This document shows, in pieces, positions 4,674-40,149 of a stretch of DNA of 64,000 nt. The translations under genes and the position numbers were made by a program. The stretch lies in the NCBI GenBank assembly GCA_963514005.1, contig OY740792.1:12214001-12278000 (forward strand), given 5' to 3'. The number at the start of each line of letters is the position of its first letter. Positions within the stretch are counted from its first letter, which is position 1. This DNA is from Raja brachyura. Lineage: Eukaryota. Under the pieces are notes generated by a model. That model had not been told where the DNA came from. It did not search any database and worked only from the letters and a program-made list of their open reading frames with translations.

Positions 4674-6548
4674 TATAACCATATAACCATATAACAATTA
4701 CAGCACGGAAACAGGCCATCTCGGCCCTTCAAGTCCATGCCGAAGAACGTTTTTCCCTTAGTCCCACCTGCCTGCACTCATACCATAACCCTCCATACCC
4801 TTCTCATCCATATGCCTATCCAATCTATTTTTAAATGATACCAACGAACCTGCCGCCACCACTTCCACTGGAAGCTCATTCCACACCGCTACCACTCTCT
4901 GAGTAAAGAAGTTCCCCCTCATGTTATCCCTAAACCTCTGTCCCTTAATTCTAAAGTCATGTCCTCTTGTTTGAATCTTCCCTATTCTCATAGGGAAAAG
5001 CTTGTCCACATCAACTCTGTCTATCCCTCTCATCATTTTAAAGACCTCTATCAAGTCCCCCCTTAACCTTCTGCGCTCCAGAGAATAAAGACCTAACTTA
5101 TTCAACCTATCTCTGTAACTTAGCTGTTGAAACCCAGGCAACATTCTAGTAAATCTCCTCTGTACCCTCTCTATTTTATTGACATCCTTCCTATAATTGG
5201 GCGACCAAAATTGTACACCATACTCCAGATTTGGTCTCACCAATGCCTTGTACAATTTTAACATTACATCCCAGCTTCTATACTCAATGCTCTGATTTAT
5301 AAAGGCTAGCATACCAAAAGCTTTCTTTACCACCCTATCTATATGAGATTCCACCTTCAAGGAACTATGCACGGTTATTCCCAGATCCCTCTGTTCAACT
5401 GTATTCTTCAATTCCCTACCGTTTACCATGTACGTCCTATTTTGATTTGTCCTGCCAAGGTGTAGCACCTCACATTTATCAGCATTAAACTCCATCTGCC
5501 ATCTTTCAGCCCATTTTTCCAACTGACCTAAATCACTCTGTAGACTTTGGAAATCCTCTTCATTATCCACAACACCCCCTATCTTGGTATCATCTGCATA
5601 CTTACTAATCCAATTTACCACCCCTTCATCCAGATCATTGATGTACATGACAAACAACAAAGGACCCAACACAGATCCCTGAGGCACCCCACTAGTCACC
5701 TGCCTCCAACCCGACAAACAGCCATCCACTATTACCCTCTGGCTTCTCCCATTCAGCCACTGTTGAATCCATCTTGCTATTCCTGCATTTATACCCAACA
5801 GTTGAACCTTCTTAACCAACCTTCCATGAGGAACCTTGTCAAAGGCCTTACTGAAGTCCATATAGACAACATCCACTGCTTTACCCTCGTCAATTTCCCT
5901 AGTAACCTCTTCAAAAAATTCAAGAAGATTAGTCAAACACGACCTTCCAGGCATAAATCCATGTTGACTGTTCCTAATTAGACCTCTTTATCCAGATACT
6001 TATATATATTATCTCTAAGTATCTTTTCCATTAATTTGCCCACCACTGAAGTCAAACTAACCGGTCTATAATTGCTAGGTTTACTTTTAGAACCCTTTTT
6101 AAACAATGGAACAACATGCGCAGTACGCCAATCCTCGGGGACTATTCCCGTTTCTAATGACATTTGAAATATTTCTGTCATAGCCCCGGCTATTTCTACA
6201 CTAACTTCCCTCAATGTCTTCGGGAATATCCTGTCAGGACCTGGAGACTTATCCACTTTTATATTTTTCAAAAGTGTCAGTACTTCTTTTACTTTGAAAC
6301 TCATAGTATCCATAGCTACTCTACTAGTTTCCCTTACCTCACATAATTCAATATCCTTCTCCTTGGTGAATACCGAAGAAAATAAATTGTTCAATATCTC
6401 CCCCATCTCTTTTGGCTCTGCAGATAGCTGTCCACTCGGTCTCTCCAATGGACCAATTTTATCCCTTGTTATCCTTTTGCTATTTATATAGCTGTAGAAA
6501 CCCTTTGGATTTACTTTCACCTTACTTGCCAAAGCAACCTCATATCTT
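4674..6548 (-). mobile_element. Young 5'-truncated CR1 LINE (RT domain) nested in an older CR1
   Basis: ORFs 5978-6532 and 4758-5954 (DFSKAFDKVPH, GVPQGSVLGP, YADD) separated by a frameshift; 8-bp tandem tail; the host CR1 continues at 4470-4673 and 6549-6650. Confidence 0.93.
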
Positions 6549-6704: not shown

Positions 6705-6835
6705 NNNNNNNNNNNNNNNNNNNNNNNNNNNNNNNNNNNNNNNNNNNNNNNNNNNNNNNNNNNNNNNNNNNNNNNNNNNNNNNNNNNNNNNNNNNNNNNN
6801 NNNNNNNNNNNNNNNNNNNNNNNNNNNNNNNNNNN
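6705..6835. other. Assembly gap (N run)
   Basis: Run of Ns between CR1 fragments. Confidence 0.98.
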
Positions 6836-13077: not shown

Positions 13078-16000
13078 TGTCACATCTTCACCTAAGATGT
13101 AGAATAATAATACTGACACAATATTTACAGGTTACATTCCTTTGTCTCTATGCTTATTATCTCCTGCCTTGGCTTACACAGCGCACCTGTGACAGGTCTT
13201 TGGTCGTAGTGCCTGTGGGATCATCAATCTGTTACCTCTCAGCACACACTGACCAATTACACAAAATTCATCTTTTATGGGAACATATGCTTTGTAAAGG
13301 CATTGATCCCATTGCCCACTGTGTATACACTTTCTGATATCTTTGAGTTCAGGATCATGTTCTGATTCCCTTTCATCTTCCTTCATTGTCACGGCTCTTG
13401 GCGTTGACTGAATGGCGACGAAGTGCACAAAGTTCTCTGCTTCCATCTCTAGCGTGGATGTTGCTCTCAACTGTTCATCCTTCAACAGTCTCGACAGCGG
13501 GTCCACGATGTTTGCTTTCCCAGCAATGTGGACTACTTTGTACTTGTACAGTTGGAGTCTTAGCACCCAATGTTCTATTCTGGCACATGGCTTGGACCTT
13601 ATCGAATAGATCGCTTCCAGCGGCTTGTGATTGGTAACGAGTTTGAATTCAAGCCGTACAAGTATGCATGGAACATTTCACAGGCCCACACTAGTCCCAG
13701 TGCTTCTTTCTCTGTTTGAGAATACTTTCTTTCCACACTGGCTAAAGATCGACTGGCATATGCTATGATTCTGGGTCCATCTGCGTGCGTCTGTATCAGC
13801 ACTGCTCCCCAGCATGTGCTATGACTTTTGTTGGTGTAGCTGGATCATAATATCCAAGGGTTTCTGCACTCGTTAGACTCTGTTTCAGTGATTTGAATGC
13901 CTGTCTCTGTTCACTACCAAACTGGAACGGTACGTCTTTCCTGGTCAACTTTCTCAGCGGATCTGCCAGTGTAGCAAAATTTGGAATAAATTTTGCACAG
14001 TGATTGACCAGTCCTGGAAAGCTCCTCATCTCGGTTGCATTCTGAGGTTCATTTGCATCTGCAACAGCTTTCACTTTGGCCTTGGCCGGGTTCAGGCCTT
14101 CACTTGTGAGTCTGTGTCCCATGAAATCCATCTCAGAGACGCCAAGCTTGTACTTTTCTTTATTCACGGTGAGTCCTGCTTCTTGAAGTTTAGTCAACAC
14201 TAGCTTTAACCTCCTGTCGTGCTCTTCACGAATTGATGCATGGACAATGATGTCATCTGATATGTTTGCTGCTCCTGGTACACCTTGAATAACTCTGTGG
14301 ATTTTGTACTGATAGATCTCGGGAGCAGCATTGATTCCAAACATCAGTCTTTTGTACCGATACAATCCACAGTGAGTGTCGAATGTTGTCACCTCTCTTG
14401 ACTCTGGATGTAATTCCAATTGATGATATCCCCACAAGATCAATTTTGGTGAACACTTTACTGGTTGAGAACTCTTGTAGCACCTCATCGACCTTAGGAA
14501 TTGGGTGTCTTTCTCTGATTATTGCCTCATTGGCCCTCCTCATGTCAACGCACAGTCTAATGTCATCATTGGGTTTCGGCACAATCACTACTGGACTCAA
14601 CCATGGTGTTGAACTGGCTCAATAATGTGCTGATCAATCATATCCTTGATTTTAGCGTCTACTTTTCTATAAAGTCCAAATGGCGTATTCCGCACTGGTT
14701 GAGCTATCAGCTTGACATTTTCATCAATGGCAAACTTCACTTGCCGGCCTTTCAATTTTCCAACCCATTGGAATACTGAGTAAAAGTCCTGCCTTATGTC
14801 ACCATATGACTGCGCTGAATTGACCTGCACTCCGATGTGAAGCACTCCCAGCTCTCGAGCTGTATTTCTCCTCAGTCGAGGTTCCCCCTTCTGCTCTATC
14901 ACCACAAATTCTGCTTCAGTTTTTCTATCTCCGGATTCTACTTTAGCCGTGAAACATCCAATGGTCTACAATGGTTTGGTTGCGTTGTATGGATATAACT
15001 TCCTGCTATACCTCCTTGACGTGCACTTGATTTTCTGCTGTTTCAAGCATTCCCAAAGTGATCTGTCAATTATGTTGCTGTCGCTACCAGAATCTACAAT
15101 CACTGGCACTGTAACACCTCCGATGGTCACTGTAACTTTCTCGTGATGACTATCATTCAATGTAAACTGATTCATTTTAACAGCATGCTCACCAGCTTCA
15201 TGAAAAAGGATTTGAGTATAGGAGCAGGGAGGTTCTACTTCAGTTGTTTAGGGTCTTGGTGAGGCCACATCTGGAGTATTGCGTACAGTTCTGGTCTCCA
15301 AATCTGAGGAAGGACATCATTGCCATAGAGGGAGTGCAGAGAAGGTTCACCAGACTGATTCCTGGGATGTCAGGACTGTCTTATGAACAAAAACTGCATA
15401 GACTCGGTTTATACTCTCTAGGATTTAGGAGATTGAGAGGGGATCTTATAGAAACTTACAAAATTCTTAAGGGGTTGGACAGGCTAGATGCAGGAAGATT
15501 GTTCCCGATGTTGGGGAGGTCCAGGACAAGGGGTCACAGCTTAAGGATAAGGGGGAAGTCCTTTAGGACCGAGATGAGAAGGAATGTTTTCACACAGAGA
15601 GTGCTGGGTCTCTGGAACTCTCTGCCACAGAGGGTAGTTGAGGCCAGTTCATTGGCTATATTTAAGAGGGAGTTAGATGTGGCCCTTGTGGCTAAGGGGA
15701 TCAGAGGGTATGGAGAGAAGGCAGGTACGGGATACTGAGTTGGATGATCAGCCATGATCATATTGAATGGCGGTGCAGGCTCGAAGGGCCGAATGGCCTA
15801 CTCCTGCACCTAATTTCTATGTTTCTATGTTTCTATCACTGGCTTCATCACCTCCGACATCACCTTCTACGTGACGGACATGACCCTTCTTTTTCTGCCA
15901 AGGTCCGTCTTTCTTTTCACTGGACTTCCCTTTCTTGTTGTAATCACTTGTCTTGTCCCTGGCCTTACTTTTACATTTCTTTGCAAAATGATCTTTATCT

Positions 16001-28616: not shown

Positions 28617-30845
28617 GTAGGTGATGCAGACTGGTTTAGCAAAGGCAGATCATCCTCAGGAAGCCTTTGTAATCAGTCGGCTAAGCATAAAAGATCATGG
28701 CTAATGTAACTTCTGACTCGGTGAGGTCTGTTTGTGAGAATAAACTGAGTAAAGATATTTGGGTATAGGCACTAAAAATGTGTAAGGTTATTCACAAATT
28801 GGAAGCAATTGGGAGATGTAACATTAGGCTTCTGGCAGTGAGGGCCTGGGACTAGGATTCCATGACTCAAATCATTTTAAGGTTGTAATTTTGTACCAAT
28901 ATTGCATTTCAGACTCCATGTCATGGAGTTATATAGCATGGAAACAGGTCCATCGGCCCAATTTGCTCACATCGACCAACATGTCCCATCGACACAAGTC
29001 TCACCTGACTACATTTGACCCACATCCCTCCAAACCTATCCTATCCAATCCATGTACCTGTCTAAATGTTTATTGGACGTTGCGATAGTACCTGCCTCAA
29101 CTACTTCCTCTGGCAGCTCATTCCATACACCTGCCACCCTTTGTATAAATCAGTTACCCCTCTGGTTCCTATTAAATTCAACCAACCCCCCCCCCCCCCT
29201 CACCTTAAACCTGTGTCCTCTTGTTCTCGATTTCCCTATTCTGGGCAAGAACCTCTGTGCACTTACCGGAGCTATTCCTCTCACGATTCTGTACACTTTT
29301 ATAAGAGTTTTAGCCTGCTCAACCTCTCCCTATAGGTCGGGCCCTCGAGTCCTGGCAACATACTCGTAAATCTTCTCTGCACACTTTCCTGCATCTTTCC
29401 TGTAAAACGGTGCCCAAAATTGAATACAATACTCTCAAATGTGGCCTCACCAATGCGTCTTATATAACTGCAACTTCACAATTTGAAGTTGTTTTAGGTA
29501 AACGTTCTTTCTCGTGTTTAAATTTATTTCAAATGTTTTCATTGATCTTTTAATACCTCTTGAATTGCTGTGATTACCAGAAGGCATGGCTGAGGTGGTC
29601 ATCATCTTTTTTATCTGTTGGAGCTGAAGCCAATCATGGTCAGTGAGTTCAGGAGAGATGAGTGAATGAACGGCGTGAGCCAGGACACATGCAATAAAAA
29701 GATCCTGCGCCGACCAGAACAGGCTTGCCCAAGCCAAAATCTGCAACTAATAAAATCTTGGCTGCAGGATTCGGCAGCAGGTTTTTTGAAACAGATGCTG
29801 TTATGGGCACAGAAATGGGCAGATTTGGTGAAATAGCAGAGAGTTGGTCAAGAAACAGTGCCAGCCCAGAGTGTATGGATGAGCCATGTAATGAGAGTGT
29901 CCAACTATACATTTACGAGTCAGGAGAGTTAAATTGCCATTAACATTGTGACTGGAACAATGGAATTCCTACTCGCTGCAGATTTGCAGGCACATAAAAT
30001 GCAACAACAGAATTAAGAAATGAATTATAAATAAATTATCGGTTATTCTAGGGGGAGCAGACCATGATTGTGGAAGTCAATGTATGCATATATATTAGAT
30101 AAGCCTCACAAATAACATGGACAAAGAAGCAAAGAGGCTAGAGTAGCATAATAATTAGGTTAGGGGGAATGAGGCATGGATCAATGAATCAGGGACATGT
30201 CTAAATTCTACTATGGAACTTTAATCCACTTAATCAAAAAACGCTAGCAGTGCAGAAATGGAAACCATGAAACTACATGGTGGCCCTGTGGCTCAGCTGA
30301 TAGAACCGCTGCTTCACAGCACCAGAGACTCTGGTTCGGTCCTGACCTCGGGAGCTGTCTGTGGGGAGTTTGCACGTTCTCCCTGGCTTTCCTCCGGGTG
30401 CTCTGGTTTGTCAGCTAATTGGCCGTCTGTAAATTGCCCCTGCTGAGTAGAGTGGATGGGAAAGTGGGGTTTAGCATAGAACTAGGGTGAACAGGCGAGC
30501 AATAATCTGCATGGACTGAAGGGCCTGTTTCCATGGTGTACCGACGGCTAAACTACTAGATAGTTGTAGAACCTAGCTGGTCCATTAATGCATTTCAGCG
30601 AAAGAAACTATCCTTTCCCGGTTTGGCTATACATGACTATTCACAAATATGATGGGGTTCTAACCACGTTCTCAATGTAGCACTAATTGTGGATGGTCTA
30701 TAATTGAGAGCATTGACAGGGATGGGGTCAGGGTCAGGGTCTGAAGAAGGGTCTCGACCCGAAAAGTCACCTATTCCTCTTCTCCAGAGATGCTGTCTGA
30801 CCCGCTGAGTTACTCCAGCAATTTGTGTCTATCTTCAGTTCAAAC

Positions 30846-31445
30846 CAGGGGTCGGCAACCTTGTTCTGCATAGGGGCCGGGTGGCATGTCTGTGAGCAGA
30901 TGGCGGCCCACATCTACCACATGTTCACATGCATCCCGCCCCATCCCGCCCCGGATGGCAGACATCAAATCACAAGTTCACATACATCCTGCCCCTTCGC
31001 GGACGCCACCCGCAGCACTGGCCTCTAGTTACGGGCGCTCACAAACATTGCGTACCTACGGTACATTGCCTTGGCTCTGTCCTGAAGGCAGTGGCTCAAA
31101 TACCCACACTCACTCGTCCCCAGCTTATTGGCAACCCCGATCCCGACAGTGAAGCCCAGACACAGAAGGTGCGCGGCCGTGCCGGCGGCTTTGCGCAGGA
31201 TGCGGTACAGCCAGAGCTCAGCGCTCGGCCCCGCTCAGGCGCTCGCCGGCTCCGCAATTGCCACCGCCAGCGCAGGCCTCCTTTCGTCCTTGCGTCACCG
31301 CGCCTGGGTGCCTAGGGCCCCGGAGGTACCGGAGATGAAGGAGGTCGGCGGGCCGGATGACTACAGAAAAAAACCCACCTGCGGGCCGGATGATTTTGGG
31401 TTACGGGCCGCATTCGGCCCGGGGGCTGTAGGTTGCCGACCTCTG
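30846..31445. mobile_element. hAT (Charlie-like) non-autonomous DNA transposon
   Basis: TIR CAGGGGTCGGCAACCT / AGGTTGCCGACCTCTG; 8-bp TSD GTTCAAAC/GTTTAAAC. Confidence 0.82.
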
Positions 31446-31967
31446 GTTTAAACCAACATCTGCAGTTCCTTCCAACACATTGGCAAATTTGGCCAGTTCA
31501 CCTCTTTGCCTTTGGTGGGAACGGTGCCCACATTCCTCACATAATTGTCTCCGTACTTCAAATTGCAATTCATTTTGTGAAGTGTTTCAAGGCCCACAGT
31601 AATAATTAAAAGAACTTCTGCTTATTAAGTTGTAATTTAATTTTTTTTAATGGTTGGAATAGGAATACCATTTTCCTGGCACATGGAATAACTCTCAGTA
31701 ATTTCCCCAAATGCAAGAAGCCAAATAAGAAGGGTCTCGACCCGAAACATCACCTATTCCTTCTCTCCAGAGATGCTGCTTGACCCGCTGAGTTGCTCCA
31801 GCTTTTTGCGTCTATTAAACAGGTGCATTAGTATATCTGAGGATAGGAATCTGAACGGGTTAGAGAGAAAATATTAAAACGCCACAGGGAGGACCTTTCA
31901 TGTGCCAATCTGGTTGCCTTGCCCATGTATTCATGCACAATGGCACTATCACTTCTTCATGCCTTTC

Positions 31968-32112
31968 TCTGGGGTGAGAGATTGCAACCTTCATGTTGTC
32001 CGCCCTGTTTCGACGAATGCAATCAACCTGGCGTGCACAATCAAATAAGATCAAATAGAACAAGTTGTCCTACAACTTTAGGCTGTGCACGCCATACAGA
32101 AGAAGAAGAAGG
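31968..32112 (+). mobile_element. Second copy of the (GAA)n-tailed short retroposon
   Basis: 8-bp TSD TGCCTTTC at 31960-31967 and 32113-32120. Confidence 0.7.
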
Positions 32113-32196
32113 TGCCTTTCAACATAACCCGTGAAGCTGTTTTGCTTCAAATCTGGCTTTTGTTGTTCCTTTATCAGTGGCCAGCATCTATACTAT

Positions 32197-32440
32197 AGAA
32201 ACATAGAAACATAGAAAATAGGTGCAGGAGTAGGCCATTCGGCCCTTCGAGCCTGCACCGCCATTCAATGTGATCATGGCTGATCATCCAACTCAGTATC
32301 CCGTACCTGCCTTCTCTCCATACCCCCTGATCCCTTTAGCCACAAGTGCCACATCTAACGCCCTCTTAAATATAGCCAATGAACTGGCCTCAACTACCTT
32401 CTGTGGCAGAGAATTCCAGAGACTCACCACTCTCTGTGTA
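32197..32440 (-). mobile_element. Short CR1 3' fragment
   Basis: (CATAGAAA)n tail and WNSLPQKVVEASS. Confidence 0.85.
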
Positions 32441-35071
32441 AAATTCTCCTCCTTGCTCTCATTAAGGGTGGCACATTGGGCCAGCGGTAGAGCTGCCGCG
32501 TCACAATGCCAGAGACCTGGGTTCGATCCTGACCTCCGGCGCCATCTGCGTGGAGTTTGCACGTTCTCCCTGTGACCGCGTGGGTTTATTCCGGGTGCTC
32601 CAGTCTCCATCCGCATCCCAAAGACGGTTCAGTTCAGTTCAGTGTATTGTCACGTGTACCGAGGTACGGTGAAAAGCTTTTCGTTGCGCGCTAACCCCCA
32701 GTCAGCGGAAGGACAGTACATGATTACAATCACTCCATTTGGAGTGTACAGATCAAGGATAAGGGAATGAGGGAGGGATTGCTGCTGTAGGAATACAGAT
32801 TTAAGAGTGTGGAGCGACTGTAATGTGAGTCTGTACATCTGCTTCTGTATCTAGCACACAAATAGTCGCTGTGTTGGGCACTACCTTGGCTCTGCGCGGG
32901 TTTGTACTCCAGTTGACTGGTTAGCACGCGACAAAAAGCTTTTCACTGTACCTCAGCACATGTGACAGTAAACTAAACTAAACTAAAGCTGTTCCCTCTA
33001 GCCTTTGCCGTTTCTACCCAGGGAAAAGAGGTTCTTACTGTCTACATATCTATGCCTCTCATAATTTTATACACTTCTATCAGGCCTCCTCTCAGACTCT
33101 GGCACTCCAGAGAATACAATCCATAGATCGTCATCCCTGTAGTCTGCAATGGATTTGTACCTGAATTTCAGAGGGGAATGTTTGATTTGCAGTGCAGGCA
33201 AGATGCTCAAACCATCTCTTCAACACGTTCCACAAAGTTTGCATTATATTGCAATTTGTCGTGAATGGCAGGGAAGTCTGATGAATGTTTGCACTTAAAA
33301 TACTGACGGGCAAATTTGTTTGTGTGAGTTGTGGAGCATCCTTCCTGCCGCCGCAGTTAATCAGATCAACTGCAGTCCACAAATCGTAGATAGTAATGCT
33401 CCTCAGTGACATACAACACAGATCCCAGTTGCTGACATGGCAATCTAAGGGAGTTAGTTTGCTGTGATTTTACTCAAATCTTATCACAATGTTTGCAGGA
33501 AACGACAGCCCAATTTTGCCTGGCTCCTCTGACGTTTAGATGCATTGGCCTTGAAATTCAACTGCATCTCTGTAGAATCTACTGAATCCCGCGACAGAAA
33601 TGCAAAGAACAAACGACACTTAGCTGAGCCAGAGACCCTGTGTCTTGTTTATTCCAGAAGCCCCTTTTACCTACATTCTCCTCAATCATAACCAATGTGC
33701 AGATAAGGCCAATTAATGGAGTTGCTATTGAGCTGTTGTGGCTGGACCTTCTTGTGAGGCTGCTGGCAGATCACCAGCGGTAACAGGCTGTACGCAAAAC
33801 TAACGTGGGCGTGAAGGCGCCACAGCTCTCCCCTTGGCCACCGAGACATACAAGGTGGCGACTGCCTGGCTTTGTCCTGCTGTGTACCGGGTTGATTTTA
33901 TGGCCTGATCTTGTTTGGTACTGCAGTGTGGGAGGTCTTTGACAGGAAGTGTTGGGGTCTTGTGACCTCGCCGGTTCGGTGGGTGAGGTAGTCGGTTGGT
34001 TCTCGACGTATGCTGGCTTTAACCGGTCGAAGTAAATTGTGTCCGTTTTTCCGTTCTGATAGATCACAAAACCTTTTGGGTAGTCCCGCGACAGAAAGTA
34101 GTGGTTGGATGACTTGGTAAGGGCCATCGTATGCTGGCTGAAGAGGTCGGCGGATGGCGTCGTGTAGCGAGCTCCAGCGAAGATGAACATTAGAAACACC
34201 TCGGATTACTGTTCCGGTGTCTCCGACTACTTTGAGTTCAGGGAGCAGGGGCTGAAGATATCCCGGGAGCATCTGTCGGAGACGGAGGGGCAGCTCAGCG
34301 AGCAGAACCGCTGCCTACACCTTCGTAACCTGCAATGTGAGGAGCTGCGGACTCGGTGTGGGCGCCTGCTGCCGGAGCTGGACATGGTTAAGAAGGATGC
34401 ACGAGAGATGCTGATGGAGATGGGAGAGCAGATAAACCAGGCCTTCGTCAAGATCATGAAAATGGAAGGCCAATTGCAGAACGTCACCAGATTGGCTGAG
34501 ACCACTCTGAAGATTTGCCAGTGGTATCTTCCCAAGACCATTGCTGAAGTCAAGGCAAAACCACCGGTCGTGGTTGTGCAGACAAGCAACGAGGCTGCTG
34601 AGACAGGGGAGACGCCTTCGCTCCAATCAAACCCACGGGCACAGACACAGCGGGCATTGAGGACACCAGCGTCTTCTCCAGCAGCGTGTGTGCAGGCTGG
34701 AGAAGCTGCTGGCCGTTCGCACGCAGATCGAGAGCGCAATGAGGCTGCAGGTGCAGGAGCGGTGGGGCGAGAGCAGCAGGAGGCCAAGGGAAACAAGAAG
34801 CTGCAGGAGCTGCACAGCCTGCAGGGCATGGGTTGGCGAGCTGGAGGCTGAGAACCTGCAGCTGGCACGGGAGCTATAGGCACACGTCAAGAGTAAATGT
34901 GAACAGGAGCAAGCCTTGAACAGTCAGAATGAGATCATCCACGAATTTAATAGACTGTTAGATTCCAATCTCGAGGAGCACCCACAATTTCTGGCGATGA
35001 AGCAGGTGGTGACTGATGTGAAGCGGAAGCTGCAGCAGGTGGAGACAGAGTCCGGCACTTTCCGCGAGGAG

Positions 35072-35818
35072 TGGCAAATTAGGAAAAGGGGAGATGCAAC
35101 CAGACCTGGGTGTCATGGTACACCAGTCATTGAAAGTAGGCATGCAGGTGCAGCAGGCAGTGAAGAAAGCGAATGGTATGTTAACATTCATAGCGAAAGG
35201 ATTTGAGTATAGGAGCAGGGAGGTTCTACTGCAGTTGTACAGGGTTTTGGTGAGGCCACACCTGGAGTATTGCGTACAGTTTTGGTCTCCAAATCTGAGG
35301 AAAGACATCCTTGCCATAGAGGCGGTACGGAGAAGATTCACCAGACTGATTCCTGGGATGTCAGGACTTTCATATGAGGAAAGACTGGATAGACTCGGCT
35401 TGTACTCGCTGGAATTTAGAAGATTGAGGGGGGATCTTATAGAAACTTGCAAAATTCTTAAGGGGTCGGACAAGCTAGATGCTGGAAGATTGTTCCCGAT
35501 GTTGGGGGAGTCCAGAACAAGGAGTCACAGTCTAAGGATAAGGGAGAATTACTTTAGGACCGAGATGAGGAAAACATTCTTTACACAGAAAGTGGTGGGT
35601 CTCTGGAATTCTCTGCCACAGAAGGTAGTTGAGGCCAGTTCATTGGCTATATTTAAGAGGGCGTTAGATATGGCACTTGTGGCTAAAGGGATCAGGGGGT
35701 ATGGAGAGAAGGCAGGTACGGGATACTGAGTTGGATGATCAGCCATGATCACATTGAATGGTGGTGCAGGCTCGAAGGGCCGAATGGCCTACTCCTGCAC
35801 CTATTTTTCTATGTTTCT
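35072..35818 (+). mobile_element. CR1 3' fragment inserted in the SPAG5 copy
   Basis: ORF 35094-35729 is a CR1 C-terminus; same tail as 15186-15836. Confidence 0.92.
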
Positions 35819-35973
35819 AACTCCAGGCCCCCGGGGATGCTCTGGGCAAGGACTGGCTTCAGGCGAAGGTGGATTCCCAGCAGCAGGTGCGGAAGTTACG
35901 AGGGACTTACTTGCAGAAGGACAGCGAGATCCAGCAGCTGGAGAAGATGATCAGACACCGAGCCATCCTGGAG

Positions 35974-36450
35974 GACAATAGACAATAGGTGCAGGATTAG
36001 GCCATTCGGCCCTTCGAGCCAGCACCGCCATTCAATGTGATCATGGCTGATCATCCCCAATCTGTACCCCATTCCGGCCTTCTCCCCATATCCTCTGACT
36101 CCGCTATCTTTAAGAGCCCTAGTTAGCTCTCTCTTGAAAATATCCAGAGAACCGGCCTCCACCGCCCTCTGAGGCAGAGAATTCCACAGACTCACACCTC
36201 TCTGTGAGAAAAAGCTTTTCCTCGTCTCCGAATTCTTAAACTGTGGCCCCTTGTTCTGGACTCCCCCAACATCGGGAACATGTTTCCTGCCTCTATCGTG
36301 TCCAAACCCTTAATAATCTTATATGTTTCAATAAGATCCCCTCTCATCCTTCTAAACTCCAGAGTATACAAGCTCAGCCGCTCCATTCTCTCAGCATATG
36401 GCAGTCGCGCCATCCCGGGAATTAACCTTGTAAACCTACGCTGCACTCCC
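35974..36450 (-). mobile_element. CR1 3' fragment inserted in the SPAG5 copy
   Basis: (GACAATA)n tail; minus strand encodes GVQRRFTRLIPGM...WNSLP; splits the ILE|ENN codons. Confidence 0.9.
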
Positions 36451-37152
36451 TGAGAACAATCAAAGAGCAGAGGCCGAGGTGGACAAGCTGTACAACCTGA
36501 TAGAGCACATCGGAAGAACTCTCCAATCAATACCTGAAGTGGTGGGAAGGCCAGCGGAGTGGAAGGGCCTCCTGCAGTGCCTTGGAGATGATCTGCCAAC
36601 ATAGTGTGAAATACGGCAAATGTGCCCTCTGGAGGAGGAAGGGACTGTGGGCTGTGGGCTGTGGGCTGTGGGCTTTTGGTTGATTCACTGTAGGATTTGT
36701 GTCTCCAGCAACAGATTTGTGTCTCCAACAGTTTAAAAGCCCAGCACTTCTCATTTATTCCAGAAGCCCCTTTTGTCTACATTCTCCTCAATCATAACCC
36801 ATGTGCAGTTAAGGCCAATTAGTGCGTCTGACCTTGGAGTTGTTATTAAGCTCTTGGTGCATCAAGTGGTAACAGGCTGTATGCAAAACCAACGTGGGCG
36901 TGAAGGCGCCACATCTCCATAACAAGTGGTGCTGTGCTGCAGAACATCATGTTAACCTGGATTTGGGAAATCTTGCTCACATTTCTGGCCACCTTAACTC
37001 CTGTTAACAAATTGTATTGATTTCTCGCTGGAATGCTTTTTCTCCGACGTAATATTCTCCCATATAGACTTTAAACTTTAGAGATGCAGCACGGAAACAG
37101 GCCTTTTGGCTCACTAAAGTCCATGCCGACCAGCGATCACCTCCTACATTGG

Positions 37153-37401
37153 TGTGGCACCTTCACGGCCGCGTTGGTTTTGCGTACAGCCGGTTACCGC
37201 TGGCGACTCAGCAGCAGCCTCACGAGAAGGTCCAGCCACAAGGGCTCAATAACAACTCCAAGGTCAGACGCACTAATTGACCTTACCTGCACACGGGCTA
37301 TGATTAGTGACAATGAAGTTAAATAGTGGCTTCTGGAATAAACGAGACACATGGTCTCTGGCTCAGCTCAGTCTCTGGCTCTGGATTTAACAGACTCCAC
37401 A
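37153..37401 (+). mobile_element. Solo LTR of the same Gypsy family, inserted in a V-SINE
   Basis: TG...CA ends and an internal AATAAA; reverse-complement homolog of 33571-33824. Confidence 0.8.
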
Positions 37402-38297
37402 GTAGTACTAACCTACACACTGGGGACAATTTACAATTTTACCGAAGCCAATTAACCTACAAACCGTGGACGTCTTTGGAGTGTGGGAGGAAACCGGACG
37501 ACCCGTAGAAAACCCACGTGGTCACAGGGAGAACGTACAGACTCCATACAGACAGCGCCCGTAGTCAGGATTGAACCTGGGACTCTGGCGCTATAAGGCA
37601 GCAACTCTACCGCTGAGTCACTGGGCAGCTCGGTGTCATGGTCACTCTGTGTGGCTACCCTCATACATCCTGGGCTGCTGCTGATCTCTGTCACACCGCA
37701 CAGTGCTGCTGCTGCTGCTGCTGTATGTGGAGGTGTCTATGTCGTTCAGAGCTGATGAAGAGGTTGTAGTGTTTAATAGTCAGTATCTCCCTCTCTGAAT
37801 CTCAGTCCGAAGAAGGGCCTCAACTTGAGACATCACCTATTCCTTTTCTCCAGAAATGCTGCCTGACCCCCCGCTGAGTTACTCCAGCATTTTGTGCCTA
37901 TCTTCAGTGTTCAATAGCCTGATGGTTGCTTCCCCACAAAGGATTCATCCTTCCTCCCACCCCTGTTCCTAAATGAAGGACACCAAATTTGGCTGTAATT
38001 TTGAAATACAAAATTACATTTTAAATTACTGTTTGTGTTATTGCCCAATATATGCAAATGAATGGATATCGCTTGGCACATAATTCTTGCTGCAGGACCA
38101 AAGCGAAAATGCAAATCTGACCGTGACATTTAGGGAATAAATTTCCAAGCAGCTTGTGGGCTTTTTTTCCCCCCCACAGACTTGCCACACCGCTGACACA
38201 GAAGAGGCACTAAGGACACCTTCAGTTGTTGTGTCAGCCCCTCTGTTCTCAGGAGGACTCAGGCACCTAAGATTGCACACTGTTCTGCTCCAAAGCC

Positions 38298-38311
38298 GTT
38301 TCCATAGCAAC
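38298..38311. promoter_or_regulatory. RFX X-box motif
   Basis: GTTTCCATAGCAAC, close to the GTTGCCATGGCAAC consensus, in non-repetitive intronic sequence. Confidence 0.45.
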
Positions 38312-40149
38312 GAAACAGGCTGGAATTTTCAGACGATGAGATGTGTGAGTCTGCCATCGTCAACAAGTGGAGGTGTGGGGAGGGGAGGGAGGGGCAACGT
38401 GGCCAGCCAGGTATGTGGTAGACTGGGCGGGAGGGTGGGGAGTGGTGGCGCAGGCAAAGGTATTTGGTGGAGGTGGGGTGGTTGTTCCCAGAAATAACGA
38501 TCTGCAGATGTGCAGGAAGGAACTGCAGATGCTGTTTACACCGAAGATAGACACAAAAAAGCTGGAGTAAATCGGGCAGCATCTCTGGAGAGAAGGCATC
38601 AGGATCTGCAGATGCTGGTTTACAAACTATAAAGGCGCAAAGTGCTGGAGTAACTCAGCGGGCCAGGCAACAACCCCGGAGAACATGGATAGGTGACGTT
38701 GTTTCGGGTCGGGACCCTTCTTCAGACTCTGTTTCAAATAACTAGTGTGGGAATGATGGACTGATTAGAAGGAAGATAGGCACAAGATGCTGGAGTACCT
38801 CAGCGGATCAGGCAGCATCTCTGGAGAAGAATAGGTGACGTTTCACTCTTGAGGCCATTCATTAGATGTTAGACCGTGCCTTTTGTGAGGCTCTTTGACT
38901 GAGAGTTGTGGACCTGTACCTGTCATTCCAGTGTCCCAACCATAGGGTGGGAGGTGGAAAGCAATGGAAAGTGGTGCAATGAAAGTCCTCTTGGAAACCA
39001 CTGCTCTCTAAGGGCTGGATTTATCTTAAGACGGTAAAATGCTCTTCTGGCTGTGAATGCACTGTTAGATTACAGGCTTATAACACCAGCTTTACTGTAG
39101 ACTCAACCAAAATCAGCTTACATTCCAAGAGATTGAACAGTGCTCTATCCATAGCTCCACCCCGAGGGCTGGAGTGACCAAGAGTATCACAGAGAGTTAT
39201 CTTGATCCCACGCATTATCATTGCCTTTCCACAGGCTATGTAACTGGTACCAAGCAATACATTTTCCTTTTCACACCGTACACTTCCATATCTCTGTATC
39301 TCCCTCTTCCCTGACTCAGTCTGAACAGGGGTCTGAACCCGAAACGTCACTCATTCCTTCTATCCAGAGATGCTGCCTGTCCCTCTGCGTTACTCCAGCA
39401 TTTTGTGCCTATCTTCGGTTTATAACAGCATCTGCAGTTTCTTCCCTACATATTTCGGCTGCTCCACTGCAAAATCTCCTCAAGGTATGCCTACTTTGAA
39501 GATGTTCTCGTCCTCTCTCCGACGAGAGTTCAGCAACATCCTCTCTCGGTGCTCCCCCTCTGTGATTCCTACTGGTCTCCGACTCCACAACCACGTTTTA
39601 ACCCAGAATCGCTCGCCTCCGCCTCCGTGCCTTCTCTGGGAAGGCGTCCTCACCACCCAGTGACGACCCTTTCTCCCATCTCCACTGGTCCCCCTCCTCT
39701 TGGACTCCCGCAGACAGCCCTCTACCCTCTTTAGACCTTTTTATTTCTAACTGCCGACGTGGCATTGTCCTGGATCTCCATTCCCTTTGTCCTATTTTCA
39801 CACTTTACGCCTCCTTATCTTTGTATCTTTTGTGCCTATCTTCGGTTTAAACCAGCATCTGCAGTTCCTTTCCTGCAACCTAATTTCCCTGCAGTCTCAG
39901 AGAGAGAAGGCTCACAGAGTGTATCTGATGACGAAAAGGCTGAGACGATTCACTGTGTCACGTTACAGCCCAGGCAACAAGGGCAAACTCTTCTGTTGGA
40001 GGAACTCAACAGGTCAGGCAACATCTGTGGAAGGAAATGGACAGGTGGCATTTCAGGTCGGGACCTGTCTTCAGTGTGAAGAAGAACTTTGTCTGTCCAT
40101 TTTCTTTCATAGATGGCGCAAGGCTTGGTGCTGGGACCACAGCTGTTTA

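What the first reader, a model, noticed from the sequence alone, without database searches (positions are those of the whole stretch)
33571..36913. LTR retrotransposon carrying a captured, spliced SPAG5/astrin gene fragment
Seen: 3' LTR, PPT and integrase tail on the minus strand, then about 1.3 kb of intronless coiled-coil coding sequence plus 3' UTR on the plus strand, then a second LTR truncated near its polyA signal. A TCTC TSD encloses the unit. No poly(A) tail or separate TSD marks the cargo, and gag, RT and PBS are gone. Known: the peptides match the astrin C-terminus (kinetochore/spindle protein), which spans many exons in mammals; LTR-mediated retroposition by template switching usually yields sense cargo. 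Inference: host mRNA transduction by a Gypsy element in unusual antisense orientation, so LTR-driven transcripts would be antisense to SPAG5 while IGSF5 read-through is sense. This copy was later disabled by frameshifts, a stop and two CR1 insertions.
Basis: partly seen in the sequence, partly recalled or inferred. Interest (0 to 1): 0.9.

Follow-up and report, generated by a model that had tools for sequence, protein, structure and literature searches.

The report
LTR element holding backward SPAG5 retrocopy
An old, dead LTR retroelement in a skate-like genome has had nearly all of its interior replaced by an intron-free copy of the last third of the spindle gene SPAG5, lying backwards. This is a real example of a known way of copying genes through RNA; its orientation is unusual, but it shows no sign of function.

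Summary
An LTR unit on the minus strand spans 33571-36913, with a TCTC target-site duplication on both sides. It has a complete 254-bp LTR, a polypurine tract and an integrase C-terminal remnant. The second LTR lacks its inner 72 nt and starts 5 nt past its AATAAA.

Between them, on the plus strand, lie about 1.3 kb colinear with residues 954-1370 of skate SPAG5 (E=5e-53), its stop codon and about 145 nt of 3' UTR. Two CR1-like LINE pieces interrupt this cargo. Contigs of the parent gene stop matching at about 34247, 34613, 35050 and 36518. The cargo crosses all four points without a break, so intron loss is shown directly.

The cargo is single-copy, whereas the element family is multi-copy. 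Parts of the unit are seen in four organism labels: each inner junction in one or two of them, and the outer LTR ends in the most diverged. Cargo-parent mismatch (13.8%) is about equal to LTR-LTR mismatch (13.1%).

The most likely origin (about 0.5) is a chimera made by the element's reverse transcriptase on a SPAG5 mRNA, in the manner of LTR-mediated retroposition. The backward cargo and missing U5 point to a switch during plus-strand synthesis. A cDNA patch at a later break (about 0.3) is not excluded.

"Gypsy", the IGSF5 context and antisense regulation are unverified. The copy is a decayed pseudogene.

The parts
33567..33570 (.). Left copy of the 4-bp target-site duplication, TCTC.
   Evidence: Read directly in the sequence. 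It matches 36914-36917.
33571..33824 (-). Complete 3' LTR of the minus-strand element: 254 bp, TG...CA, with AATAAA at 33653-33648 on the minus strand.
   Evidence: Depth is about 170 times that of the flank, so the family is multi-copy. A contig from organism D spans the outer boundary (record 9).
33825..33839 (-). Polypurine tract (..AAGGGGAGAGC) directly upstream of the 3' LTR.
   Evidence: Read directly in the sequence.
33840..34165 (-). Remnant of the 3' end of pol: a frameshifted integrase C-terminal domain and tail.
   Evidence: Translations. The Atlas gives integrase C-terminal SH3-like clusters (best score 0.94). Contigs of other family copies match at 87-90% up to 34151-34165 and then run on unlike the window (records 2-5, 10, 11).
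34166..34218 (.). 53 nt of unassigned sequence at the element/cargo junction.
   Evidence: A frameshift-aware alignment to the 40 parent residues upstream scored no better than shuffled peptides (16 against 14.7 +/- 2.5). It has no other match in the window.
34219..35079 (+). SPAG5 cargo, part 1 (parent residues 954 to about 1266). It carries frameshifts, a 61-nt gap at 34612|34614 and a TAG at 34877-34879.
   Evidence: phmmer E=5e-53 to XP_055513388.1. tblastn. Parent exon boundaries at about 34247, 34613 and 35050 are seamless here (records 7, 12, 14, 21, 30).
35080..35819 (+). CR1-like LINE 3' fragment inserted in the cargo. Its start is approximate.
   Evidence: The ORF 35094-35729 resembles the C-terminus of CR1 ORF2 (from my own knowledge). 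Summed depth runs to the millions and loose ends fall at 35807 and 35819. It is 98% identical to an inverted copy at 32215-32442.
35820..35973 (+). SPAG5 cargo, part 2 (parent residues about 1269-1322).
   Evidence: tblastn, 82% identity.
35974..36451 (-). Second CR1-like LINE fragment, 5'-truncated, with a target duplication of about 9 bp (35961-35969 and 36452-36460).
   Evidence: Loose ends at 35974 and 36451.
36452..36604 (+). SPAG5 cargo, part 3: the end of the coding sequence (parent residues about 1321-1370) with the native stop TAG at 36602-36604.
   Evidence: tblastn, 78% identity. The parent's last-exon boundary at about 36518 is seamless here (record 8).
36605..36748 (+). SPAG5 3' UTR. 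It holds a TTTAAA hexamer at 36732-36737 and has no poly(A) tail.
   Evidence: The parent-gene contig matches to 36745, where the contig itself ends (record 8). Sequence read.
36749..36913 (-). 5' LTR lacking its inner 72 nt (the U5 side). Homology ends 5 nt past AATAAA, and it also carries a 29-nt internal deletion.
   Evidence: A contig from organism B spans the cargo/LTR junction (record 24). Contigs from organisms C and D span the outer end (records 32 and 16).
36914..36917 (.). Right copy of the target-site duplication, TCTC.
   Evidence: Read directly in the sequence.

Best explanation
This is a one-off chimera of an LTR retroelement and a host mRNA. It was most likely made by the element's own reverse transcriptase before it entered the genome, which is LTR-mediated retroposition.

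Shown:
- A spliced SPAG5 mRNA fragment (residue 954 through the stop codon to about the natural 3' end) replaces everything between the R region of the 5' LTR and the integrase tail of a minus-strand LTR element.
- The whole unit is bounded by intact outer LTR ends and a 4-bp target-site duplication.
- The cargo lies antisense to the element.

Inferred:
- The strand that carries the element's sense also carries SPAG5 antisense, and the 5' LTR has U3 and part of R but no U5 or primer-binding site.
- The simplest single process is therefore this. Plus-strand DNA starts at the polypurine tract and copies U3 and part of R. It then switches onto (or is continued on) the 3' end of a co-packaged SPAG5 mRNA and copies about 1.3 kb of it. 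It then switches back to element minus-strand DNA in the integrase region and finishes through PPT-U3-R-U5.
- The resulting DNA has both integrase-recognised ends and was integrated. Alternatively, it recombined into a resident copy of the element.
- Lacking U5, the primer-binding site, gag and pol, it could not move again.
- It then decayed as a pseudogene and received two CR1-like insertions.
For: - Cargo is SPAG5: E=5e-53, colinear with residues 954-1370.
- Cargo is mRNA-derived: parent-gene contigs with unmatched flanks end at about 34247, 34613, 35050 and 36518, and the cargo is continuous across all four (records 7, 8, 12, 14, 21, 30).
- The cargo has no poly(A) tail and no duplication of its own.
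- It replaces the interior of one element rather than interrupting it. Element homology stops at 34151-34165 on one side and at 36749 on the other.
- Both outer LTR ends and the TCTC duplication are present.
- These are the defining features of LTR-mediated retrocopies in fly, mosquito, zebrafish, chicken and mouse (PMC5131818).
- The cargo is single-copy while the element family is multi-copy (table 2), as expected for a dead-end product.
- Cargo-parent mismatch is 92/665 = 13.8%. LTR-LTR mismatch is 20/153 = 13.1%. The cargo is therefore not detectably younger than the integration.
- The cargo ends about 11 nt after a poly(A)-signal-like hexamer. This suggests that the mRNA's 3' end itself took part in the joining.
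Against: - The published template-switch model acts during minus-strand synthesis and gives sense cargo with complete LTRs. [quoted passage not shown]
- I know of no documented plus-strand switch onto an mRNA.
- Microsimilarity at the junctions could not be tested, because neither the parent mRNA nor intact family copies could be fetched.
- 53 nt at the left junction remain unexplained.
- The age comparison rests on only 153 LTR columns.
- No species with an empty site or an intact element at this site was available.
Confidence: 0.5

Rival explanations
1. Post-integration repair patch. A complete element integrated here, which produced the TCTC duplication. Later a double-strand break, or two breaks, removed about 4-5 kb from the R region of the 5' LTR to the integrase tail. 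The gap was filled by end-joining with a reverse-transcribed SPAG5 mRNA fragment, either as an endonuclease-independent LINE event or as a class-2 templated-insertion event. Under this reading the orientation is random.
For: - The cargo has no poly(A) tail and no duplication, there is a target deletion, and there are 53 nt of unassigned filler at one junction. These are the hallmarks listed for class 2 templated insertions, which can include spliced cDNAs (PMC5110952).
- Antisense orientation and an arbitrarily truncated LTR need no special pleading here.
- LINEs with reverse transcriptase are hugely abundant in this genome.
Against: - The break would have had to fall inside one LTR element and still leave both outer LTR ends.
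- Reported patches are short (73-414 bp in the experimental system), against about 1.3 kb here.
- A deletion of several kb is also needed.
- The cargo is not younger than the LTR pair.
- The cargo ends at about the mRNA's natural 3' end, which a random patch does not predict.
Confidence: 0.3
2. Coincidental assembly from separate events. For example, an ordinary LINE-made SPAG5 processed pseudogene was later flanked by independent insertions of the same LTR family, or a sense-oriented capture was later inverted, with deletions trimming everything to the present shape.
For: - The LTR family is abundant, and a third copy lies 240 bp away at 37153-37401.
- The two LTRs of the unit are only slightly more alike (86.9%) than either is to the third copy (84%).
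Against: - The matching TCTC sits at fixed TG/CA ends, with a chance of 1 in 256.
- The two LTRs share one orientation.
- There is no SPAG5 sequence outside the LTR pair.
- There is no poly(A) tail.
- This reading needs several precisely placed events.
Confidence: 0.07
3. A domesticated regulator. The unit persists because transcripts started in the truncated 5' LTR run antisense through the SPAG5 fragment and yield small RNAs or antisense RNA acting on the parent gene.
For: - The truncated LTR keeps U3.
- The locus is retained in four organism labels.
- SPAG5 is a germline and mitotic gene.
Against: - About 14% mismatch to the parent leaves few long perfect matches.
- Two LINE insertions and many indels lie in the cargo, and the LTR has an internal deletion.
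- The stop codon arose only in one lineage, which is the pattern of neutral decay (table 3).
- No RNA evidence was obtained.
- Retention over a few percent of divergence is expected for neutral DNA.
Confidence: 0.03

Closest known systems
LTR-mediated retrocopies (Tan et al. 2016, Genome Res 26:1663; PMC5131818)
   Same: - A partial, intronless mRNA copy replaces the interior of an LTR retroelement.
- Discontinuous element sequence lies on both sides, and both LTRs are present.
- The retrocopy has no poly(A) tail and no duplication of its own.
- The product behaves as a non-autonomous or dead element.
   Different: - The cargo is antisense to the element.
- The 5' LTR lacks U5, and no primer-binding site or gag piece is left.
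- The host is a cartilaginous fish, a group the paper did not examine.
- Microsimilarity at the junctions was not testable here.
Class 2 templated sequence insertions, i.e. endonuclease-independent cDNA patches at double-strand breaks (Onozawa et al.; review PMC5110952)
   Same: - The inserted sequence is RNA-derived and can be spliced.
- There is no poly(A) tail and no duplication.
- The target carries a deletion and there may be filler nucleotides.
- Either orientation is possible.
   Different: - The insert here is several times longer than typical patches.
- It lies exactly within one LTR element and preserves that element's termini.
- It ends at the mRNA's natural 3' end.
LINE-made processed pseudogenes
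   Same: It is an intronless copy of the 3' part of an mRNA, truncated at the 5' end, that has decayed into a pseudogene.
   Different: There is no poly(A) tail, no flanking duplication of 5-20 bp, and the flanks are two distant parts of one LTR element.
Gene transduction by retroviruses and by plant LTR elements such as maize Bs1
   Same: Host coding sequence is carried between the LTRs in place of element genes.
   Different: - Those cargoes lie in the element's sense and are propagated in further copies.
- This one is antisense, single-copy and unable to replicate.

Membership tests
SPAG5 (astrin) gene family, as a pseudogene copy | Significant, colinear sequence similarity to annotated SPAG5 proteins. 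| tested here: met
   - phmmer E=5e-53 with 72% identity to L. erinacea SPAG5.
- E=1e-26 to 1e-33 to four other elasmobranch SPAG5 proteins.
- tblastn matches cover residues 954-1370 in order.
Retrocopy (mRNA-derived duplicate) | The parent's introns are absent from the copy. | tested here: met
   Parent-gene contigs with unmatched flanks define boundaries at about 34247, 34613, 35050 and 36518, and the cargo is continuous across each (table 8).
LTR-mediated retrocopy (Tan et al. 2016) | The retrocopy replaces part of the element's interior and is flanked by discontinuous parts of one element. | tested here: met
   The integrase tail, polypurine tract and LTR lie on one side and an LTR on the other. 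Family homology ends at 34151-34165 and at 36749.
LTR-mediated retrocopy (Tan et al. 2016) | Both LTR termini are present, with the element's target-site duplication. | tested here: met
   TG...CA ends and TCTC on both sides. The 5' LTR is incomplete on its inner side.
LTR-mediated retrocopy (Tan et al. 2016) | The retrocopy has no poly(A) tail and no duplication of its own. | tested here: met
   Sequence at 34150-34230 and 36730-36760.
LTR-mediated retrocopy (Tan et al. 2016) | Microsimilarity between the mRNA and the element at the switch points. | not testable with these tools
   This needs the parent mRNA and an intact family member beyond the junctions. At most TCTC (4 nt) could be shared at the right junction.
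LTR-mediated retrocopy (Tan et al. 2016) | The cargo lies in the element's sense, as implied by switching during minus-strand synthesis. | tested here: not met
   The cargo is on the plus strand, while the integrase ORF, polypurine tract and AATAAA are on the minus strand.
LINE-made processed pseudogene | A 3' poly(A) tail and a flanking target-site duplication. | tested here: not met
   Neither is present.
Ty3/Gypsy LTR retrotransposon | Gypsy-type reverse transcriptase and integrase sequence and gene order. | tested here: inconclusive
   - Only the integrase C-terminal domain remains.
- Pfam found nothing.
- Two homology searches were blank.
- Atlas neighbours carry MLVIN_C, Integrase_p58_C, SH3_Tf2-1 and IN_DBD_C.
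- There is no room for env between the integrase and the polypurine tract.
Class 2 templated sequence insertion (break repair patch) | No duplication or poly(A) tail; end-joining marks (deletion, filler, microhomology) at the target. | tested here: inconclusive
   - The absence of a tail and duplication, the missing several kb of element and the 53 unassigned nt all fit.
- The insert length of about 1.3 kb exceeds the reported 73-414 bp.
- These marks cannot be told apart from a template-switch product.

The most novel reading that the evidence does not exclude
The unit is a fossil of an undescribed, orientation-inverting route of LTR-mediated retroposition. In this route, plus-strand strong-stop DNA (U3 and part of R) jumps onto the 3' end of a co-packaged host mRNA, or that mRNA end primes on R. 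The product carries antisense cargo and a U5-less 5' LTR, yet keeps integration-competent ends.
Probability: 0.3. Interest if true: 0.5.

Novelty: new member of a known kind. Interest (0 to 1): 0.3.

Why it matters
It adds a cartilaginous fish to the animals in which LTR elements, and not only LINEs, have copied host mRNAs into the genome. It is also an unusually clean fossil: its boundaries are defined, the intron loss is demonstrated, and parts of the unit are seen in several related organisms.

If the backward orientation and the missing U5 reflect a switch during plus-strand synthesis, the locus would record a step of retroelement replication that has not been seen to capture host RNA. That would need more examples to establish.

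As it stands, the copy is a decayed pseudogene with no sign of function.

Tried and rejected
- **Pfam, PDB sequence search and the Atlas on the cargo pieces** gave only coiled-coil noise. The exhaustive phmmer search was what identified SPAG5.
Exon boundaries were taken from laid contigs instead.
- **Classifying the element:** Pfam found nothing on the integrase pieces. The search for homologous proteins was blank twice. tblastn of the integrase tail against the window found no related element.
- **Assigning the 53-nt junction stretch** to upstream SPAG5 codons with a frameshift-aware alignment gave a score no better than shuffles. It has no other source in the window.
- **IGSF5 context:** no Ig-domain motif was found in the six-frame translation. 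The ten long ORFs outside the unit that were scanned hit only reverse-transcriptase and RNase H families or nothing. No scan note mentions IGSF5.
- **Rfam** found nothing in 30000-40000. The bacterial-type promoter and terminator scan is not meaningful for this genome.
- **Multi-copy chimeric family** is rejected. Depth over the cargo is that of the flank plus the parent gene.
- **LINE-made processed pseudogene** is rejected, because there is no poly(A) tail and no duplication.
- **Narcine isoform comparison**: isoform X6 lacks 51 residues inside the region, but the limits do not match the skate exon map, so it was not used.
- **Supplementary tables of Tan et al.**, which might give cargo orientation, are not held.
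Full report
**Scope and constraints**

- All protein searches used stop-free pieces of the window, given by reference.
- The N run at 6705-6835 was not touched.

**Anatomy of the LTR unit**

- The minus strand carries an LTR element.
- Its 3' LTR is 33571-33824: 254 bp, TG...CA, with AATAAA on the minus strand at 33653-33648.
- Immediately upstream on that strand lie a polypurine tract (33825-33839) and two frameshifted ORF pieces. They read ..RRPLQPAYDGPYQVI.. and ..FVIYQNGKTDTIYFDRLKPAYV...
- The Atlas groups 33906-34100 (minus strand) with integrase C-terminal SH3-like domains. The best score is 0.94, and all ten best family-bearing hits fall in one clan: MLVIN_C, Integrase_p58_C, SH3_Tf2-1 and IN_DBD_C.
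- A second LTR in the same orientation is at 36749-36913. It is 86.9% identical to the first over 153 ungapped columns.
- This second LTR has a 29-nt internal deletion and lacks the 72 nt that correspond to 33571-33642. Its homology stops 5 nt beyond the AATAAA.
- TCTC flanks the unit at 33567-33570 and 36914-36917.
- A third, complete copy of the LTR lies inverted at 37153-37401. It is 84% identical to each of the other two.

**The cargo is SPAG5**

- The piece 34168-34680 (plus strand) hit only SPAG5 proteins in the exhaustive search.
- The best hit is Leucoraja erinacea XP_055513388.1: E=5e-53, 72% identity, residues 951-1092 of 1370.
- Four other elasmobranch SPAG5 proteins followed at E=1e-26 to 1e-33, and sturgeon and chimaera SPAG5 at about 1e-4.
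- tblastn of that protein on the window gives four colinear matches:

| Window coordinates | Parent residues |
|---|---|
| 34219-34824 | 954-1183 |
| 34676-35098 | 1125-1275 |
| 35821-35985 | 1269-1324 |
| 36440-36601 | 1317-1370 |

- The last match ends at the native stop codon, 36602-36604. There is no other SPAG5 match anywhere in the 64 kb.

**The two interruptions are CR1-like LINE fragments**

- They lie at about 35080-35819 (plus strand) and 35974-36451 (minus strand).
- The summed contig depth over them runs to the millions.
- The second has a duplication of about 9 bp, GAGGACAAT / GAGAACAAT.

**Lesions in the cargo**

- A 61-nt gap at 34612|34614.
- Frameshifts near 34670, 34770 and 34828.
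- A 4-residue in-frame deletion.
- A TAG at 34877-34879.

**Intron loss is shown directly**

I laid Logan contigs of four runs, from four organism labels, on 33000-37500 at 80% likeness. Besides the locus's own near-identical contigs, more diverged contigs appear that match only part of the cargo and then run on unlike it:

| Matching stretch | Source | Mismatches | Unmatched flanks |
|---|---|---|---|
| 34247-34612 | organism D | 38 | 124 and 206 letters |
| 34614-35050 | organisms A, B and C | 54 of 437 | about 190-250 and about 94 letters |
| 36518-36745 | organism A | 38 of 228 | 160 letters upstream |

- These contigs are exons of the parent gene with their introns.
- The cargo is continuous across about 34247, 34613, 35050 and 36518, so it derives from spliced mRNA.
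- The 21 parent residues missing from the cargo (MTRAGNERKEAATSDIRSEQS) are conserved in all elasmobranch SPAG5 proteins. They drop out exactly at the 34613 boundary.
- This may reflect an alternative splice site or a skipped mini-exon in the source transcript, or a later deletion. It is unresolved.

**Junctions**

- Contigs of other copies of the element family match 33736-34165 at about 87-90% and then continue unlike the window (records 2-5, 10, 11). The element therefore ends at 34151-34165.
- The first clear SPAG5 codon is at 34219.
- The 53 nt in between do not match the upstream parent residues better than shuffled peptides, and they match nothing else in the window.
- Read antisense they give ..SNVHLRWSSL.., which might still be integrase.
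- On the right, parent homology reaches at least 36745 and LTR homology starts at 36749.
- There is no A-run at that junction.
- A TTTAAA hexamer sits 11 nt upstream, so the cargo probably ends at about the mRNA's natural 3' end. This last point is inference.

**Copy number and distribution**

In run X1:

| Region | Depth |
|---|---|
| Flanks | about 10.5 |
| Cargo bins (flank level plus the parent's contigs at about 3-5) | 12-21 |
| LTR | about 1750 |
| Integrase tail | 220-430 |

- The chimera is therefore single-copy, while the element family has tens to hundreds of copies.
- Own-locus contigs span the element/cargo junction in organisms A (34106-35099, 3 differences) and C (34106-360, 5 differences).
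- A contig spans the cargo/LTR junction in organism B (36425-36806).
- Contigs span the outer LTR ends in organisms C and D.
- Flank divergence from the window is about 0.3-3%.
- These pieces suggest that the unit predates the split of the four labels, although the two inner junctions were not seen in organism D. None of the four shows an intact element at the site.
- At 34877 the contigs of organisms C and D read C (CAG), so the stop codon arose late, in the lineage of the window.

**Ages**

- LTR-LTR mismatch is 20/153 = 13.1%. From 13 transitions and 7 transversions I compute a Kimura distance of about 0.146.
- Cargo-parent mismatch is 92/665 = 13.8%.
- The parent evolves under constraint, so the cargo is at least as old as the LTR pair within wide error. 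This fits co-integration, and it also fits an early later event.

**Mechanism**

The structure meets the published description of LTR-mediated retrocopies (PMC5131818):
- a partial mRNA copy replaces the element's interior;
- discontinuous element flanks lie on both sides;
- both LTRs are present;
- the retrocopy has no poly(A) tail and no duplication of its own.

That model has reverse transcriptase switch from element RNA to mRNA and back during first-strand synthesis, which gives sense cargo and complete LTRs. A review notes that transduced sequences are usually in the sense of gag-pol (PMC7264820).

Here the cargo is antisense and the 5' LTR lacks U5. One process explains both features. 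Plus-strand DNA primed at the polypurine tract copies U3 and part of R. It continues on the 3' end of a packaged SPAG5 mRNA. It then returns to element minus-strand DNA in the integrase region. The product has both integrase-recognised ends but no U5, primer-binding site, gag or pol, so it is a dead end, which fits its single copy. This is inference, not demonstration.

The main rival is a cDNA patch at a break inside an already integrated element (class 2 templated insertion, PMC5110952).
- It predicts random orientation, an arbitrary deletion and possible filler.
- It needs the break to fall in this element while sparing both termini.
- It needs a patch several times the usual length.
- It does not predict the end at the mRNA's 3' terminus.

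I give the chimera made by the element's reverse transcriptase 0.5, the repair patch 0.3, coincidental multi-event assembly 0.07 and a regulatory role 0.03. The remainder is unassigned.

**What is not supported**

- 'Gypsy' is unproven. Only an integrase C-terminal domain remains, and the searches were blank.
- No IGSF5 exon or any other host exon was found in the window.
- Expression and small RNAs were not tested, because the single reads call went to DNA contigs.

**Verdict**

This is a real and well-bounded LTR-flanked SPAG5 retrocopy, ancient and decayed. It is a new member of a known kind with an unusual orientation. Interest is 0.3.

Noticed in passing
window 37153-37401: A third, complete copy of the same LTR lies inverted about 240 bp to the right of the unit. 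It is 84% identical to each LTR of the unit and sits inside another very abundant repeat, other copies of which join 37141 to 37403-37438. It is probably a solo LTR from an independent insertion.
   Followed up: partly
window 34877-34879: The in-frame TAG of the cargo reads CAG in all contigs of two of the related organisms and in the parent gene. The stop codon is therefore a late change specific to one lineage, whereas the frameshifts appear older.
   Followed up: partly
window 34612-34614: 61 nt of parent coding sequence (21 residues conserved in all elasmobranch SPAG5) are missing from the cargo exactly at a parent exon boundary. The source mRNA may have used an alternative splice site or skipped a mini-exon.
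   Followed up: partly
window 32215-32442 and 35580-35807: Two CR1-like 3' ends in inverted orientation, 3.1 kb apart, are 98% identical. This is much closer than the age of the cargo that one of them interrupts. The family reaches summed contig depths in the millions in all four runs.
   Followed up: no
window 4758-5954 and 13796-14488 (minus strand): ORFs with reverse-transcriptase domains (RVT_1; the second also has an RNase H-like domain) belong to other retroelements. None of the long ORFs scanned in the 64 kb looks like a host gene exon.
   Followed up: no
organism D, cargo bins 34208-34962: Depth over the cargo in organism D is 3-4 times that of the flank. One contig (34395-34614, 6.8% mismatch, no gaps) differs from the contig taken as the parent exon. 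That organism may hold an extra SPAG5-like copy, or its orthologous retrocopy may differ at 34614.
   Followed up: no
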